Below are positions 34,142-44,527 of a stretch of DNA of 64,000 nt, piece by piece. The stretch comes from Guillardia theta CCMP2712 (lineage: Eukaryota; Protista; Cryptophyta), in contig NW_005434619.1 of NCBI RefSeq assembly GCF_000315625.1, positions 120,303 to 184,302 on the forward strand. Reading direction: 5' to 3'. Numbering within the stretch: position 1 is the first letter of the stretch; the number at the start of each line of letters is the position of its first letter. The notes under the pieces were generated by a model. It had not been told where the DNA came from. It worked only from the letters and a program-made list of their open reading frames with translations, and did no database searches. Both the position numbers and the translations under genes were made by a program.

Positions 34142-37638
<3,497 letters not shown>

Positions 37639-37806
37639 AGGAGGTCAAACAAGCTGCTGGTCGTTGTAAATGTGAAGAGAAAAGAATTGTAGGGGTAAGG
37701 GGAGAGAGGATGAGGATGAGAATGAAAGTGAAGAGGAACAAACAAGTAGCAGCATGAGAACGCAAATGCGAAACCAGAGCTGCGAGCACGAATGTATCAC
37801 AAACTC

Positions 37807-38473
37807 CTACTCTGTTCTCCTCTGCTCTTCTCCCTTCGTCTCTCCTCCCTGCGTCCCTTCCTTCTTCGTCGCCTCCTCCTCCCCGCTCGCCGCCATCAAT
37901 CTGCTTTTCGCCCACTCGAGGTGCTCAGCGACCATCTCGTCCTTGCCCGCCCATGCTCTCAACGCCTCCTCCACAACAGGCACCAGCAGCTTGTTCCTCG
38001 AGTTCCCAGCCGCCACTGCGACGTTCCTGATGAACCGCGCGAGGCCGATGCGCTTGATGGGAGAAGAGGAGAAGGTCTGGAGGAATGAGTCTTCCGACAT
38101 GAGCAGGAGGTCCTGCGGAGGAGAGAAGCGATCATGGGGGGGGCGAGAGCAGCACAACAGGACATATTTGTCGTGCTCAGACACAAGTCAAAGTCAAACA
38201 CACGGAACGTCAACTACTCTTGTCATGAGAGACTCCAACAAACACAGTCATTCAGCATGATTCAGAGATCATTTCAACACGCTCCGATGACCCTCGTTTC
38301 ATCTTCACCTGTAACTTGGGCGCACTGACGGACAGATCGACCTGCCCGAAGAGAGGAGAGCCTGCGATATCTCCCCATTCGAACTTGTTCCATGGGCAGA
38401 CCTGCCATGCTGTCGTCACAGGAAAAGCATAGCAGGAGAGGAAGAGAAGGAGAAGGGCGAGCAAGAGTAGGAA

Positions 38474-38556
<83 letters not shown>

Positions 38557-38592
38557 AGAGCAGGAGCAGGAGCAGGAGCAGGAGCGAGGAGT

Positions 38593-38642
<50 letters not shown>

Positions 38643-40144
38643 CCCCGACTCTTCTTTACCTGCTGGCAGACGTCACAGCCGTAGATCCTGTTGCCCATCG
38701 GCTCCCGTAGCTCGTGTGGGATGCTGCCCTTGTTCTCTATGGTCAGATAGCTGATGCATTTCCTCGCATCCAGCACGTGCTCCCCAACAAACGCGTTCGT
38801 GGGACATGCCGTCATGCACTTGCTACACTTCCCGCACCCTGCCCTGCTCCTCTTGACCTCGTCGGCGGGAAGAGGGATCGTGGTGAGAATCTCTCCGAGG
38901 AAGAAGCCTGATCCGACCTTCGGGCCTGATCCATCCACATACATCAACGNNNNNNNNNNNNNNNNNNNNNNNNNNNNNNNNNNNNNNNNNNNNNNNNNNN
39001 NNNNNNNNNNNNNNNNNNNNNNNNNNNNNNNNNNNNNNNNNNNNNNNNNNNNNNNNNNNNNNNNNNNNNNNNNNNNNNNNNNNNNNNNNNNNNNNNNNNN
39101 NNNNNNNNNNNNNNNNNNNNNNNNNNNNNNNNNNNNNNNNNNNNNNNNNNNNNNNNNNNNNNNNNNNNNNNNNNNNNNNNNNNNNNNNNNNNNNNNNNNN
39201 NNNNNNNNNNNNNNNNNNNNNNNNNNNNNNNNNNNNNNNNNNNNNNNNNNNNNNNNNNNNNNNNNNNNNNNNNNNNNNNNNNNNNNNNNNNNNNNNNNNN
39301 NNNNNNNNNNNNNNNNNNNNNNNNNNNNNNNNNNNNNNNNNNNNNNNNNNNNNNNNNNNNNNNNNNNNNNNNNNNNNNNNNNNNNNNNNNNNNNNNNNNN
39401 NNNNNNNNNNNNNNNNNNNNNNNNNNNNNNNNNNNNNNNNNNNNNNNNNNNNNNNNNNNNNNNNNNNNNNNNNNNNNNNNNNNNNNNNNNNNNNNNNNNN
39501 NNNNNNNNNNNNNNNNNNNNNNNNNNNNNNNNNNNNNNNNNNNNNNNNNNNNNNNNNNNNNNNNNNNNNNNNNNNNNNNNNNNNNNNNCCCCTCCCTCCC
39601 TCCTCCCAGCCCTGACGTAACAACAACTGCCCTCCTCTCTACCTGAGAGATCCTTTCGCCTTCTCATTCGATCCTCGCGCGCCAGGAAGTTCATCTCTCC
39701 GTGGTACCCGCTCTCTATCCATCTCTCAAACGCCTCCATCCTCTGCGATGGCTCGCTGGTAGTCACATTCGCCCTCCACAGACCGAGCTCAGCCGCCTTA
39801 TTCTTCATCCTCTCCCTCAGCGTCAACAGCGCTTCCTCGTCATCCATGGGTACCGTCAGAGGACCTGCATCAACGACGTTCTTCGTCTTCTTCTTCCTCC
39901 TCTTCTTTGGCTCCCCCAAGCTGCAGAATCCCCTCCATCCCTCTATCCCTAGCAGAGACCTCCCTCTTCCTACCACTGGCAAAACATCTCGTCTTTCCAT
40001 CACTGACGAGTATCCTCCTCCTCCTCCTCCTCCTCCTCCTCCTCCTCCTCCTCCTCCTCTCGCTCTGCTCATCGCGCCCGTTGAGCTCCTCACGCAGGCT
40101 CCCGTCCATGGCGCCACGATACCAGCGATGCGCCTGCTCAGCAT
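37807..40144 (-). CDS. queG: Epoxyqueuosine (oQ) reductase QueG, intron-containing, with a mitochondrial-type presequence; middle lies in a gap
   Basis: WIESGYHGEMNFL; GSGFFLGEILT; CGKCSKCMTACPTNA; LDARKCISYLTIE; GNRIYGCDVCQQ|VCPWNKF; SPIKRIGLARFIRNVAVAAGN; EHLEWA. All eight 4Fe-4S cysteines are visible. GT-AG introns. N-terminus MLSRRIAGIVAPW...RGFCS. Confidence 0.93.
38477..38641. repeat. (CAGGAG)n array in a queG intron
   Basis: Lies between the GCDVCQQ and VCPWNKF exons. Confidence 0.9.
38950..39588. other. Assembly gap inside queG (other gaps at 12289-12388, 14400-14499, 28766-28865, 30821-30920, 32910-33468, 36726-37243 and about 52478-52577)
   Basis: Runs of N, most of them flanked by simple repeats. 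Confidence 1.
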
Positions 40145-40273
40145 GTGCGGGCGAAACTTTCCGAACTTTGAGCAACTGGATTTCTCAAACTCGACATGCA
40201 AAAGTTTCCGAAATTTCCTCAGGCTGTCGGGGAGGCAGAGGGATGGGCGTACCAGCTGCTCACATGTACTCTT

Positions 40274-40317
<44 letters not shown>

Positions 40318-40556
40318 AACCCATCTACTGCCCTTCCTCCTCTTCCTCCTCTTCCTCCTCTTCCTACACATAGTAGGTCTCCATCTCCTTCACAGTCGTC
40401 GACTCTCCTTTCCTCTGCTCCCATTCACTCCCCTCAAACCCCCAATGTCACCATCCTGTTCTCCACTTCCTTTGTGCCCCCTCCCTTTCACAAACCTGTG
40501 CTACATTGCTCCGGTGCCCTGAATCGCTCCTCGCATCGAACACCTTCACCAGATTC

Positions 40557-41666
40557 ATGTTCCTCCTCCGCCGCCTCTCTCCTCACCACGACGTCTCCTC
40601 GGCACAGTTCTTCACTCCCAAGGCGGGTAGGAGGACCATTGTCCAACCGCTCGTGCCGATCTCCTTGCAGCGAGCGAGGAGGAATCGTCCCAAGGTTCGC
40701 ATTGCTCGCCTTGCTCCTCCCCCTGGGCCTCTCCTCCTCATGCACACCTTCCGCCATCACGGGATCGGAAGAGCATGGCAGCATGAGATGGGGGGGGCAT
40801 GCGGGTCGAAGAGCGACGGCGATGCTTCGAATGAGGGGGAAGGGAGTAGACTTCCTTGTACGGCTGGACGACTCGGAGGATCCTAGAAAGGTTTACGGGG
40901 ACCCGCTCCCTATAGGGCTGGCGTGGGTGGACAATGAGAGGAGAGAGAGAGAGCGAGAAGGGGAGGACACTGTGAGTAGGAGCAGCTTGCAAGCCAAGGA
41001 GGAGGAGGAGGAGGAGAAGGAGGAGGAGGAGGAGAAGGAGAAGGAGAAGGAGAAGGAGAAGGAGAAGGAGCAGGAGAAGGAGACTGTGGAAGTTGACAGC
41101 TTCGAGAGGACAACGAGCTCGCTGTTGGAGAGGGTCAGTGCGCTCATGCAGGAAGGCGAGGTCGACGAGGCTGTCAAGGTCATGCAGGAGCTGATCACTC
41201 AGGTGGGCCCTCAGCCCAGCGTCGTCCTGCGTCTCGTGCGCCTGCTGGTTCTCAAGGGAGACTTCTTTGCTGCCAACGAAGTGGTGTTCCAGGCGTGCAA
41301 GGTGAGGGCGGACGGGAGAGGAGGAGAGGAGGCAGGTAGACGGGTTGGGTGGAAAGAGGAGGGGGATTGAGAAATCAAGGCACGGGACGATCTGGGGGAG
41401 AGGAGCAAGAGAAAGAGAGCGGAGGGATACGGACGGAGAAGGTAGGAATAGACAAGGAGGATATGAGAGCGTGAGAGCGGTGTTGTATTGAGCGACAGCA
41501 TGGCAGTGAACATGCTGACTGAGTTCTTACCAACAGAAATTCCCTGACGACGATGAAATGTTGTTTATCAAAGCTAGTCTGCTGAAGCAACAAGGCTACC
41601 TCGGGGAGGCTGAGAGCTGTTATAGGTGAAACTGCTGCTGCTGCTGCAGCTTGCTGCTGCTGCAGC

Positions 41667-41706
<40 letters not shown>

Positions 41707-44527
41707 TTCGCATGCTGTGTCACTAAGCTCTTCGATTCTCGTCTTTCTTCCATTGTTGTCTTGCTCCATGATGATGGTGTCGAGCAGGAGGGTTCTGGAG
41801 ATGAACAGCAAGAATGCGGACGCTCTCTGTCATCTCGGAACTCTGGTCGCCGCCAAGTCGCCTGAGGGTTACAACGATGAATCAGAGATGGTCCTTCCTC
41901 CTCCTCCTCCTCCTCCTCCTCCTCCTCCTCCTCCTCCTCCTCCTCCTCCTCCTCCTCGTGATGCCACTTCATCATAGTCTTCGTCCGCCTCTCGCTCTTC
42001 CTCCTCCTCCTGCTTCCCATCCTGCTCTCCCCTCCTCTTTTTCTTCCCCTCTCCTCCCTCTTTGAATTGGTAGCCCCATCTATCTCCTCCTCCTCCTCAT
42101 TGTCTTTTGCTTCACTTACTTGTCCTCCGTTGCTGCAGCTGCTCTCCGCCGCTCTTTCCTTGAAGCCCGATGACGTCATCATATTGACCAACTACGCAAA
42201 CATCCTTCAGAACCGAAAGAGTTTCGAGCGGGCCGGGCAACTCTTCAAGAGGTTTGCTACCTTCACCTGTCTTTGCTGTCTCCTTTTCCAATGCTCCTGC
42301 TAGCTGTTATGCGTGGTTTTAACATTTCTGTCGTTTCCTCTCTTCTCCTCTCCTCCCTCCTTCACTCCCTCCTCCCTCCTCCCTCTCTCCTGCTTCCTCC
42401 CTCCTGCTTATCCTTCCTTATCCTCCTACTGTCAACTTCGCTTCTTCGCCTCTGCCTCCCTCCAGGGCACTAGAGCTGCAGCCCCAACGAAGTCTCCTGC
42501 ACAGCAATTATGCGGCGCTGCTGTGGGACAAATACCAGGAGGAGAGGAGGGAGGGCAACCAAGACCAGTCAGACTACCAACGTGCGCTCCTCCTGCTCAA
42601 GGAGGCTGTTCGGCTAGATCCCGAGCATGCTCCATCCTTGAACAACTACGCCAGGCTGCTCGCTCAGGAGGGCGAGACAGATGCCAGGTTGTCTCCTTCT
42701 CTTCGTATCCTTGTACATGCTCTCCTCTCTCCGTCAGTCTCTCTTCGGTCCTGCTGTGTCGTCCTGCTGCTCCTTCCCTCTGTTCCACCCGATGCCCCTC
42801 CCTTGTCTTCCTGGTGACTCGTCACTTCCCCTTGCTTCTCCGCTTCTTTCCTCTTTCTCGTCTCCCTCCTCCCTCTCATTGTAGATTTGGCAGTGCTGCT
42901 GTGCCGAATGAAACTGAAGATGCCAACGAGATCTTTGAAAAGGCTCAAGAAGTCGATCCAAACAACGGAGAGATGAAGGTACCGAGGAGGAGGACGAGGA
43001 TGACGAGGATGACGAGGAGGGGTGAGGGGGAAAGCTATGACAATGACAATGACAATGACAACAAAAGGTTCAACATGCGAAGCATCTCATCAATCAGCGT
43101 TTGTTCCTCCCTGCCAAGGTCCATCCTCCCTCCCTTCCCCTCTCTCCCCTCTGCTCTCCTTCCTCTCGTTCTCCTCCTCTGTCTCCTCTCTCCGCTCTCC
43201 GCCCTCTCGTCACACGATCACAGGGCATTCTAGAGGAGGCTCTGAGCATGGACCCTCCTGTCAGCAACGAGCTCAGAGCAGAAGCGTTCATCCTGCATGG
43301 AATGGTCTGCTACCGCCTCCTCCCTTCAGCTGCCGCTGACATTGGTTTGAGATCTGCGAGGAGGAGGGAGGGATGCAGCAGCTCAAGGCAGCGGTCAAGT
43401 ACTACCAGCAAGCGCTCGAAGCCCTCCCGCACTCCCCTCCGTTCCATGCTGTCTTCCGCCATGCAGCACTGGTGAGGGATGACGATGGCTTGACTTGTTC
43501 GTTCGTGCGCTCCTTTTCCTCCTCCTGCTCGTCATCATCATCACCGCCATCATCATCACCACAACCACCATCACCACCATCTCCATCATCTCCATCATCT
43601 CCATCATCATCATCAACAACAACAACAACAACAACAACATCTTCTCCATCATCATCATCATCGCTCTATCATCGCTCCATCATCCTTCTTATCCTCCTCT
43701 TCCTCATGTTCATATGAATTATCAGAGTTTTCATGGATCTTGTCTTCCCCCTCTTTTCACATTCTTGCTGCTCCTTTCCTTTCCCTGTCCTGGTTCTTTT
43801 CCCTTCATTTCTCAGCTTGCTACACAGCAATGGATCTGCATGGAGAACCTGGAGGAGGCCGAGGAGAGCTTCAAGAAAGCTCTTGAAATCCAGCCAGACA
43901 GCAGGGAGTGCATGGTAAGGCACAGAGGGGGGGGAGGACACTAGCGGCTGTTGTCAGGGAAGCGAGGGGAGGAAAGAGGGTGGGAAAGTGCTGTTGTTAG
44001 GATACAGTGAAGTTGGAGGGAGATTGCATGGCTGGTTTGCCAAGGAGGAAGGAGGAGGGGGTCCAAACAGGAGTTGGAGGGGTCAGAAAGGGAACGAAAT
44101 CCTTGCGAGTACTTGACCATGGCCCAGGTCCAATACGCTATGCTGCTGTGGGAGGGGAAAGGAAATGATAAGGACGCGCTGCTGCTGCTTAGGAGGAAGC
44201 CTTCCTCACTCCGAACCTCATTTCTCCTGACCCTTCTGCAGAGTGCTGGAAGTCGATCCCAAGGACAAGACAGCGCTAGACGCATGTGCGCAGATCCTGG
44301 AGCAGCGGCAAGTTGGCTACTGTGAAGACGAGCATGTAGCCAGATCACTGCGGCAGGTTGCGGAGGAGGAGGAGCAGGAGGTGCAGGAGAAGGCCCTGCT
44401 TGAAGACGGTCGAGGGTCGGGAGGAGGGAGAGGGAACAGGAGGGGTTGGAGGAGATCGCTCAAGTCTGTAGTTCACCGTTTGAGGGCAATCGTTGCAAGA
44501 TTGTTTCCATTCCGTAAACGAAGATGA
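40557..44527 (+). CDS. Multi-exon TPR-repeat protein, probably secretory or plastid targeted (start uncertain)
   Basis: Repeated TPR motifs: AESCYRRVLEMNSKNADALCHLG; ALSLKPDDVIILTNYA; ALELQPQRSLLHSNYA; AVRLDPEHAPSLNNYA; AEESFKKALEIQPD. Hydrophobic FALLALLLPLGLS segment near the N-terminus. Confidence 0.85.

What the first reader, a model, noticed from the sequence alone, without database searches (positions are those of the whole stretch)
37807..40144. Intron-containing, organelle-targeted QueG (cobalamin-dependent epoxyqueuosine reductase) in a eukaryotic nuclear genome
Seen: a QueG homolog with both 4Fe-4S motifs intact (CxxCxxCxxxCP, CISYLTIE, GCDxCQxxCPWN), split by GT-AG introns carrying the host's typical microsatellites, so it is not bacterial contamination. 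It has an Arg/Ser-rich, acid-poor N-terminal extension (MLSRRIAG...RGFCS) like a mitochondrial presequence. Established: QueG performs the last step of bacterial queuosine synthesis (oQ to Q on tRNA, after TGT and QueA) using cobalamin, while eukaryotes are held to salvage queuine via QTRT1/2. Inference: this alga may run a bacterial-type preQ1/oQ to Q route in an organelle, or convert salvaged epoxy-queuine, which would be an extra B12-dependent function. The segment holding the catalytic His/Asp/Arg residues lies in the N-gap and cannot be inspected.
Basis: partly seen in the sequence, partly recalled or inferred. Interest (0 to 1): 0.85.

Follow-up and report, generated by a model that had tools for sequence, protein, structure and literature searches.

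The report
Cryptophyte nuclear QueG gene, expressed
The alga Guillardia theta has a real, spliced and expressed nuclear gene for the vitamin-B12-dependent enzyme QueG, which finishes the tRNA base queuosine; it probably works in the mitochondrion, but the same pathway was already described for green and red algae in 2025.

Summary
On the minus strand at 37807-40144 lies a QueG (tRNA epoxyqueuosine reductase) gene with both 4Fe-4S motifs, GT-AG introns and a roughly 110-residue N-terminal extension. The genome is Guillardia theta CCMP2712.

The assembly gap was tested first. A spliced transcript contig joins all the exons and carries 292 letters that the assembly lacks. The reading frame is kept: 502 + 292 + 268 = 1062 = 354 codons. 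The 49 gap letters I could read encode QueG motifs (..SEILPEV.. and ..GFIGKNTLLI|GPKVGSG..). The catalytic His, Asp and Arg themselves remain unseen in G. theta. They are conserved in its four closest relatives.

The genome also holds YhhQ and QueA in one open frame, and a Chlamydia-type TGT. It has no QueE, QueF or QueH. This fits an organellar preQ1-salvage route rather than de novo synthesis. MetH and methylmalonyl-CoA mutase are present and MetE was not found, so B12 is already needed.

In a tree the protein sits in a eukaryotic QueG clade with red algae, next to Myxococcota-like and Anaerolineae bacteria.

Novelty is limited. A 2025 paper (PMC12301720) proposed this mitochondrial BL-TGT/QueA/QueG(/YhhQ) pathway for Chloropicon and red algae. 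This scan had already reported the YhhQ-QueA fusion of the same genome. I rate it a new member of a known kind. No eukaryotic QueG has been tested biochemically.

The parts
39643..40144 (-). Exon 1 (502 nt). The start codon is at 40142-40144. It encodes the roughly 110-residue N-terminal extension and the first ~55 residues of the QueG domain (..ELGLWRANVTTSEPSQRMEAFERWIESGYHGEMNFLAREDRMRRRKDLS). The donor is cag|GTAGAG at 39642.
   Evidence: (TIGR00276 positions 2-52). The transcript contig covers 39643-40003 without a break.
40004..40069 (-). A (GGA)n microsatellite inside exon 1. It encodes a run of 16 glycines within the presumed presequence. Transcript contigs break here.
   Evidence: and 17 (listed as a skipped repeat; the X1 record has 29 more letters beyond 40003).
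38928..39642 (-). Unresolved stretch. It comprises an intron start (39589-39642), the assembly gap (38950-39588) and an intron end (38928-38949). In reality it holds 292 nt of exon sequence, about 98 codons, which is the cobalamin-binding and catalytic segment, plus at least two introns.
   Evidence: the joint 38927/39643 has 292 letters between the two sides. The loose ends read ..SEILPEV.. and ..GFIGKNTLLI.. The genomic loose end at 38949 runs into a CCT repeat; no other QueG piece exists anywhere in the assembly.
38660..38927 (-). Fe-S exon (268 nt): GPKVGSGFFLGEILTT.., first cluster motif CGKCSKCMTACP, then CISYLTIE, then GCDVCQQ.
   Evidence: TIGR00276 positions 155-239, 141 bits; Fer4_16.
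38402..38659 (-). Intron (258 nt, GT..AG) filled with a CTCCTG microsatellite.
   Evidence: spliced out in X1 and X2 contigs.
38309..38401 (-). Exon (93 nt): VCPWNKFEWGDIAGSPLFGQVDLSVSAPKLQ. It completes the second Fe-S motif.
38113..38308 (-). Intron (196 nt, GT..AG).
   Evidence: the joint is seen in both X1 and X2.
37807..38112 (-). Last exon: the C-terminal helical (HEAT-like) region ..IKRIGLARFIRNVAVAAGNS..VAEHLEWAKSRL.., then an acidic tail and the stop TAG at 37807-37809. The transcript contig ends at 37817, so the stop and the 3' UTR are not verified by RNA.
   Evidence: (TIGR00276 positions 269-336).

Best explanation
This is a functional, expressed nuclear gene of Guillardia theta CCMP2712. 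It encodes a full-length tRNA epoxyqueuosine(34) reductase, QueG, which uses cobalamin and two 4Fe-4S clusters, preceded by an N-terminal targeting extension.

I infer that it is the last step of a bacterial-type preQ1-salvage route inside an organelle, most likely the mitochondrion. In this reading, YhhQ (in one open frame with QueA) brings in preQ1. A Chlamydia-type TGT puts preQ1 on organellar tRNAs with GUN anticodons. QueA converts it to epoxyqueuosine, and QueG reduces that to queuosine with B12.

Shown here: the gene, its splicing, its expression, its frame across the gap, its family, and the presence of the partner genes. Inferred: enzymatic activity, the compartment, and preQ1 as the precursor.
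For: Family: TIGR00276 matches on three exons. All eight Fe-S cysteines and the CISYLTIE motif are present. The protein is 64% identical to its nearest relative, P0003.

Expression and gap: a spliced contig at depth 40 in run X1 and contigs from a second study, X2. There are 292 extra letters, in frame, and both readable edges encode QueG motifs. The span is 98 codons, against 97 in relative P0003.

Relatives P0001-P0004 keep DYH, VDTG and MER(D), which correspond to B. subtilis His106, Asp134 and Arg141.

Partners in the same genome: QueA and YhhQ in one 914-residue open frame on C171. A BL-TGT on C135 is 100% identical to GUITHDRAFT_146805; its nearest named kin are Aphanomyces, Chlamydiales and Dependentiae. 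No QueF, QueE or QueH was found.

B12 use: MCM and MetH are present and MetE was not found.

Targeting: in residues 1-48 there are 5 Arg and no Asp or Glu, the sequence starts MLSRR, and the highest 12-residue hydrophobicity is only 1.43, so there is no clear signal peptide. Relatives P0002 and P0003 have similar leaders.

Literature: PMC12301720 predicts mitochondrial targeting for the same enzyme set in Chloropicon and Galdieria.

Tree: G. theta falls in a eukaryotic clade with red algae (85/98 support). Its own subclade has 100/100 support.
Against: 243 of the 292 gap letters were not readable with my tools, so a stop codon or a lost catalytic residue in G. theta is not excluded.

No targeting predictor was available. 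Cryptophyte plastid or periplastid targeting would need a signal peptide, and residues 6-18 (IAGIVAPWTGACV) are mildly hydrophobic.

The first 47 codons and the start codon are not covered by transcript contigs.

BL-TGT is cut by a scaffold end, so its completeness is unknown.

A QueC-like ORF and a PTPS/QueD-like gene exist, so deazapurine metabolism here may be richer than plain preQ1 salvage.

No eukaryotic QueG has been assayed.
Confidence: 0.7

Rival explanations
1. Same enzyme and same pathway, but located in the complex plastid (stroma) or the periplastidial compartment that houses the nucleomorph. There it would modify plastid or periplastidial tRNAs rather than mitochondrial ones.
For: The clade groups with red algae, which would fit a gene brought in with the red-algal endosymbiont. 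Residues 6-18 are mildly hydrophobic. Plastid genomes also encode GUN tRNAs (general knowledge).
Against: There is no convincing signal peptide: the highest 12-residue hydrophobicity is 1.43, and I saw no obvious cleavage site followed by Phe. The leader is Arg-rich and acid-free, like a mitochondrial presequence. The homologous set is predicted to be mitochondrial in Chloropicon and Galdieria.
Confidence: 0.15
2. The protein is made without a functional targeting signal, or it uses the basic KKRRKKK block as a nuclear signal or an RNA-binding patch. It would then act on cytosolic or nuclear tRNAs or on another epoxide substrate, for example tRNA carrying salvaged oQ.
For: A conserved basic block (PKKRRKKKTK in G. 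theta, GGKKARRRAK in relatives) precedes the domain. The first 47 codons are not verified by RNA.
Against: The same basic block is at the very N-terminus of a close relative in the bacterial-type sister group, P0005 (MGRRKRKRR). It therefore looks like part of the mature enzyme rather than an address signal. The cytosol already has the QTRT1/QTRT2-like genes and QNG1 for direct queuine use. QueA and BL-TGT, which are needed to make oQ-tRNA, are of the organellar type.
Confidence: 0.08
3. A transcribed but enzymatically dead relic, with catalytic residues lost in the unassembled segment.
For: The catalytic segment is unseen in G. theta.
Against: The frame and the length (98 against 97 codons) are preserved, and both readable edges are conserved QueG sequence. 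Every visible motif is intact. Expression is seen in two studies. The partner genes are retained.
Confidence: 0.05

Closest known systems
Bacterial QueG, tRNA epoxyqueuosine(34) reductase (TIGR00276; B. subtilis structures 5D08/5T8Y, S. thermophilus 5D6S)
   Same: The domain order is the same: a cobalamin-binding N-domain, a two-cluster ferredoxin domain and a C-terminal helical domain. The Fe-S motifs and the CISYLTIE motif are the same. The nearest relative P0003 aligns to 5D08 over residues 136-461 with E = 7e-56.
   Different: It is encoded in a eukaryotic nucleus with at least four introns. It carries a roughly 110-residue N-terminal extension that includes a microsatellite-encoded Gly16 run. 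The catalytic segment is not in the assembly. It belongs to a eukaryote-only clade whose nearest bacterial kin in my sample are Myxococcota-like MAGs and Anaerolineae, not alphaproteobacteria or cyanobacteria (the sample was biased towards best hits).
Mitochondrial bacterial-type Q salvage proposed for Chloropicon and red algae: BL-TGT + QueA + QueG (+ YhhQ), PMC12301720, 2025
   Same: The enzyme set is the same. QueF is absent. YhhQ and QueA are linked. BL-TGT is of the Chlamydia type. The leaders are presequence-like. The QueG proteins group with red-algal ones.
   Different: The lineage is different (a cryptophyte, with a secondary red plastid and a nucleomorph, hence more possible destinations). 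YhhQ and QueA lie in one open frame here rather than being neighbouring genes. I found no paper naming cryptophyte QueG.
QueH (DUF208), the cobalamin-independent epoxyqueuosine reductase
   Same: It catalyses the same reaction, oQ-tRNA to Q-tRNA.
   Different: It is an unrelated fold and cofactor, and it is not found in this genome. The step here therefore depends on B12.

Membership tests
QueG (TIGR00276 / PF08331 + PF13484) | Two 4Fe-4S cluster motifs (CxxCxxCxxxCP and CxxCxxxCP, with a further Cys in CISYLTIE) | tested here: met
   CGKCSKCMTACP, CISYLTIE and GCDVCQQVCPWN are read from the exons. Fer4_16 scores 70 bits.
QueG (TIGR00276 / PF08331 + PF13484) | A match to the equivalog HMM over its whole length, above the 200-bit cut-off | tested here: inconclusive
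   The exon-wise scores of 23.2 + 140.8 + 46.4 bits cover profile positions 2-52, 155-239 and 269-336. The crude sum is about 210 bits, and positions 53-154 are unassembled. No single scan of the spliced protein was possible.
QueG (TIGR00276 / PF08331 + PF13484) | A cobalamin-binding DUF1730 domain with the catalytic Asp134, the proton-relay His106 and Arg141 below the corrin ring (B. subtilis numbering) | tested here: inconclusive
   These residues lie in the 292 transcript letters that the assembly lacks. Only the edges could be read (..SEILPEV.. and ..GFIGKNTLLI..), and both are QueG-like. Relatives P0001-P0004 and the red algae keep DYH, VDTG and ER.
QueG (TIGR00276 / PF08331 + PF13484) | A C-terminal helical (HEAT-like) tRNA-binding region | tested here: met
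   The last exon matches TIGR00276 positions 269-336. RNVAVAAGNS and EHLEWA align with the bacterial sequences. The Pfam HEAT_2 domain itself was not called.
QueG (TIGR00276 / PF08331 + PF13484) | Reduces oQ-tRNA to Q-tRNA with cobalamin | not testable with these tools
   This needs complementation or LC-MS.
Algal organellar bacterial-type Q salvage (PMC12301720) | QueA and a Chlamydia-type BL-TGT are encoded in the same nuclear genome | tested here: met
   QueA lies at C171:86573-87490 with further exons downstream. BL-TGT lies at C135:375-1082 and equals GUITHDRAFT_146805; its nearest named kin are Aphanomyces, Chlamydiales and Dependentiae.
Algal organellar bacterial-type Q salvage (PMC12301720) | A YhhQ precursor transporter is present and preQ1 synthesis (QueE, QueF) is absent | tested here: met
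   Vut_1/YhhQ scores 76 bits in the same open frame as QueA. There are no hits for QueF (PF14489, TIGR03139) or QueE (TIGR03365). Caveats: the search works exon by exon, and a QueC-like ORF exists.
Algal organellar bacterial-type Q salvage (PMC12301720) | Mitochondrial targeting of the enzymes | tested here: inconclusive
   Only composition could be checked. Residues 1-48 have 5 Arg and no Asp or Glu, no strong hydrophobic core, and a maximum hydrophobic moment of 0.51. No predictor or localisation data were available.

The most novel reading that the evidence does not exclude
Cryptophytes and a set of uncultured marine protists (the P0001-P0004 clade from Tara Oceans-type data) run a complete B12-dependent, preQ1-fed queuosine pathway in an organelle. 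This would make QueG another cobalamin-dependent enzyme of red-lineage algae, beside MetH and methylmalonyl-CoA mutase. It would tie organellar translation to two bacterial micronutrients, B12 and preQ1. In G. theta the destination could even be the plastid or the nucleomorph compartment rather than the mitochondrion.
Probability: 0.5. Interest if true: 0.55.

Novelty: new member of a known kind. Interest (0 to 1): 0.38.

Why it matters
Algal B12 need is usually discussed through MetH, with methylmalonyl-CoA mutase and class II ribonucleotide reductase beside it. QueG would add another cobalamin-dependent enzyme to G. theta and its relatives, and it would link B12 and bacterial preQ1 supply to organellar tRNA modification. 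G. theta is a cultured reference species, so the 2025 proposal made from Chloropicon genomes could be tested there by measuring Q, oQ and preQ1 in organellar tRNA with and without B12. The work also repairs a gene model that the assembly gap had broken.

Tried and rejected
1. Looking for the missing exon elsewhere in the assembly. Only the three pieces at this locus match QueG.

2. Finding the G. theta protein or its transcript product in the protein database. There was no 100% hit; the best was 79%. The full 292 letters could therefore not be read, because read laying prints only 30 letters per loose end and allows a single call.

3. The raw RNA run X20. Nothing was laid from the 6% of the run that was read, so it is no test.

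4. Rfam gave no hit at gathering score in the window. At E up to 5 in 39589-42000 there was no preQ1 family, only weak miRNA and snoRNA noise.

5. Classifying the TGT copies against PDB sequences. This discriminated only weakly, and one call failed on an in-frame stop. The homologue search settled the C135 copy.

6. Literature on cryptophyte QueG. Nothing relevant was found. The 'QueG' hits in PMC10209819 and PMC13375345 were an author name and a remark about bacteria.

7. The supplementary trees of PMC12301720 are images, so I could not check whether Guillardia appears in them.

8. Bacterial contamination is rejected. Three introns are removed in cDNA-like contigs, and the gene sits in a 64-kb eukaryotic window.

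Full report
**What is there**

The region 37807-40144 carries, on the minus strand, a gene whose exons translate to QueG. NCBIfam TIGR00276 (tRNA epoxyqueuosine(34) reductase) matches three of the four visible exons:
- exon 1 at profile positions 2-52;
- the Fe-S exon at positions 155-239 (141 bits);
- the last exon at positions 269-336.

Pfam Fer4_16 matches the Fe-S exon. The motifs CGKCSKCMTACP, CISYLTIE and GCDVCQQ|VCPWN are intact; the last is split by an intron. Only this locus in the 87.1-Mb, 669-scaffold assembly matches QueG.

The assembly is Guillardia theta CCMP2712. A TGT fragment from scaffold C135 is 100% identical to GUITHDRAFT_146805.

**The gap (tested first, as asked)**

I laid four public runs on 37750-40250.
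- **Run X1.** One contig of 1339 nt at depth 40.5 maps as 37817-38111 | 38308-38399 | 38658-38927 | 292 letters not in the assembly | 39643-40003.
- **Run X2.** Contigs from another study show the same two downstream splices. They also have loose ends that run into the gap from both sides.
- **Run X16.** This DNA-like run keeps the intron flanks, and at 38949 it runs on into a CCT repeat.

The three introns are therefore really removed in RNA, and the two sides of the gap belong to one transcript.

The frame holds. Exon 1 from the ATG is 502 nt, then come the 292 unseen letters, then 268 nt to the end of the Fe-S exon. That makes 1062 nt, or 354 codons. The whole spliced CDS is 1461 nt, 486 codons plus the stop.

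The 19 and 30 letters shown at the two edges translate in frame to ..DLSEILPEV.. and ..GFIGKNTLLI|GPKVGSGFFLGE.. Both are typical QueG sequence. The unseen span is 98 codons, against 97 in the nearest relative.

I could not read the remaining 243 letters. The catalytic residues of G. theta itself are therefore inferred, not seen.

**Where the catalytic residues lie**

In B. subtilis QueG, Asp134 is the proposed general acid. His106 relays protons, and Arg141 shields the lower face of the cobalamin. Mutating any of the three lowers Q production (PMC5175355).

Aligning relative P0003 to PDB entry 5D08 places these residues at DYH, VDTG and (M)ER(D). All three fall in the gap-encoded part of the G. 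theta protein. They are conserved in P0001-P0004, in the red algae and in the bacterial neighbours.

**Relatives**

The closest proteins, P0001-P0004, are 73-79% identical over the Fe-S exon and up to 64% overall. They come from marine metagenome assemblies of protist size fractions (P0002: Tara PRJEB4352) and also carry long N-terminal extensions.

Next come red-algal proteins:
- Galdieria sulphuraria;
- Cyanidiococcus;
- Porphyridium purpureum, already named 'Epoxyqueuosine reductase';
- Pyropia;
- Hildenbrandia.

In an IQ-TREE analysis (63 rows, LG+C20+F+G4):
- G. theta groups with P0001-P0004 and P0121 at 100/100 support;
- this group sits inside a 29-row clade (85/98) that holds all the named red algae;
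- one unnamed member of that clade, P0141, lies on a contig with ThiF/E2_bind and LSM genes, so it is eukaryotic;
- the neighbouring groups are Myxococcota-like MAGs and Anaerolineae, and their order is unresolved.

The sample was drawn from best hits, so the donor lineage is only a hint.

**The rest of the pathway in this genome**

| Component | Result |
|---|---|
| QueA | present on C171 |
| YhhQ (Vut_1) | just upstream of QueA, in the same 914-residue open frame |
| Chlamydia-type TGT (BL-TGT) | on C135, cut by the scaffold end; nearest named kin Aphanomyces, Chlamydiales, Parachlamydiales, Dependentiae |
| Other TGT-family loci | C11 and C25 (C11 scores slightly better to QTRT1; C25 not classified), plus a duplicated fragment on C226/C496 |
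| QNG1 | present |
| QueF | not found with two models |
| QueE | not found |
| QueH | not found |
| QueC-like ORF | present, 104 bits against a cut-off of 150 |
| PTPS/QueD-like gene | present |

The YhhQ-QueA arrangement was already reported by this scan for the same genome (s1-435477).

Without QueE and QueF, de novo preQ1 synthesis is unlikely. I did not resolve what the QueC-like and PTPS/QueD-like genes do.

Methylmalonyl-CoA mutase and MetH are present and MetE was not found. B12 is therefore already required and, by general knowledge of MCM, is already delivered to mitochondria.

**How it most likely works**

*Shown:* a spliced, expressed, in-frame QueG gene with intact visible motifs, and the partner genes in the same genome.

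*Inferred:*
1. YhhQ imports preQ1 into an organelle.
2. BL-TGT exchanges G34 of the Tyr, His, Asn and Asp tRNAs for preQ1.
3. QueA builds epoxyqueuosine.
4. QueG reduces it to Q, passing electrons through the two clusters to cobalamin.

The compartment is most likely the mitochondrion, for these reasons:
- the leader starts MLSRR;
- residues 1-48 have 5 Arg and no acidic residue;
- there is no convincing signal-peptide core (maximum 12-residue hydropathy 1.43);
- the leader has a modest amphipathic segment;
- relatives P0002 and P0003 have similar leaders;
- the homologous set is predicted to be mitochondrial in Chloropicon and Galdieria.

A conserved basic block (PKKRRKKKTK) lies just before the domain. 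It also opens the close relative P0005 from the bacterial-type sister group, so I read it as part of the mature enzyme rather than an address signal. Plastid or periplastid targeting is the main rival, because cryptophytes have more compartments than green or red algae.

**Comparison with what is known, and novelty**

[quoted passage not shown] It notes the same set in red algae and proposes an ancient origin.

I found no paper that mentions QueG or queuosine synthesis for Guillardia or for cryptophytes. This is a new member of a known kind. Its added points are a corrected gene model, proof of splicing and expression, and a clade of marine protist relatives. No eukaryotic QueG has been tested at the bench.

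**Leads checked with a negative result**

Around QueG, Rfam finds nothing of that kind.

**Limits**
- 243 of the 292 gap letters are unread.
- The first 47 codons, the stop codon and the UTRs are not covered by RNA contigs.
- No targeting predictor was available.
- Absence calls come from exon-by-exon searches of a draft assembly.

Noticed in passing
L004 (G000:C171:85073-88990), about C171:85664-87490 on the + strand: The YhhQ/Vut_1 domain and the QueA domain lie in one uninterrupted 914-residue open frame, joined by a linker of about 170 residues. The remaining QueA exons follow downstream. This scan has already reported it (s1-435477).
   Followed up: partly
L005 (G000:C135:375-1082, - strand): A Chlamydia-type TGT (BL-TGT), equal to GUITHDRAFT_146805. 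The gene runs off the start of the scaffold, so the public 233-residue model is a fragment.
   Followed up: partly
L009 (G000:C226:37848-37982) and L010/L014 (G000:C496): Two further TGT-like fragments with identical scores (42.8 bits), slightly closer to bacterial than to eukaryotic TGT. They may be a duplicated or allelic unplaced copy, or a second bacterial-like TGT.
   Followed up: partly
L017:1501-2067 (G000:C20:534715-535281, + strand): An intronless QueC-like ORF. It has a PP-loop SGGVES and a C-terminal Cys cluster HCGTCKQC. It scores 104 bits to TIGR00364, below the 150-bit cut-off, and has a presequence-like N-terminus. Its role is unknown, since QueE and QueF were not found.
   Followed up: partly
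L028 (G000:C37:442989-443336): A PTPS/QueD-family gene (68 bits). I did not decide whether it is a eukaryotic PTPS or a QueD.
   Followed up: no
G000:C4:885683-887085 and G000:C43:461675-462650: Methylmalonyl-CoA mutase and the B12-dependent methionine synthase MetH are present. No MetE (PF01717) match was found, which fits B12 auxotrophy.
   Followed up: partly
window 40140-40205, - strand: A 19-codon upstream ORF (ATGTCGAGT...TGCTGA) ends 4 nt inside the QueG start codon region. It would matter only if it lies in the 5' UTR, and the transcription start is unknown.
   Followed up: no
window 39860-39915, - strand (residues about 78-95): A basic block PKKRRKKKTKNVVDAGP sits just before the QueG domain. 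It is conserved in relatives P0001-P0004 (GGKKARRRAKDSVDGG), and a similar block forms the N-terminus of P0005, a close relative from the bacterial-type sister group. It may be an RNA-binding tail.
   Followed up: partly
window 12289-52577: The window has eight runs of N. Five are exactly 100 nt and three are estimated at 518-639 nt. Two of the large ones (36726-37243 and 38950-39588) flank or interrupt the QueG gene, and both border CT-rich or CCT-rich microsatellites.
   Followed up: no
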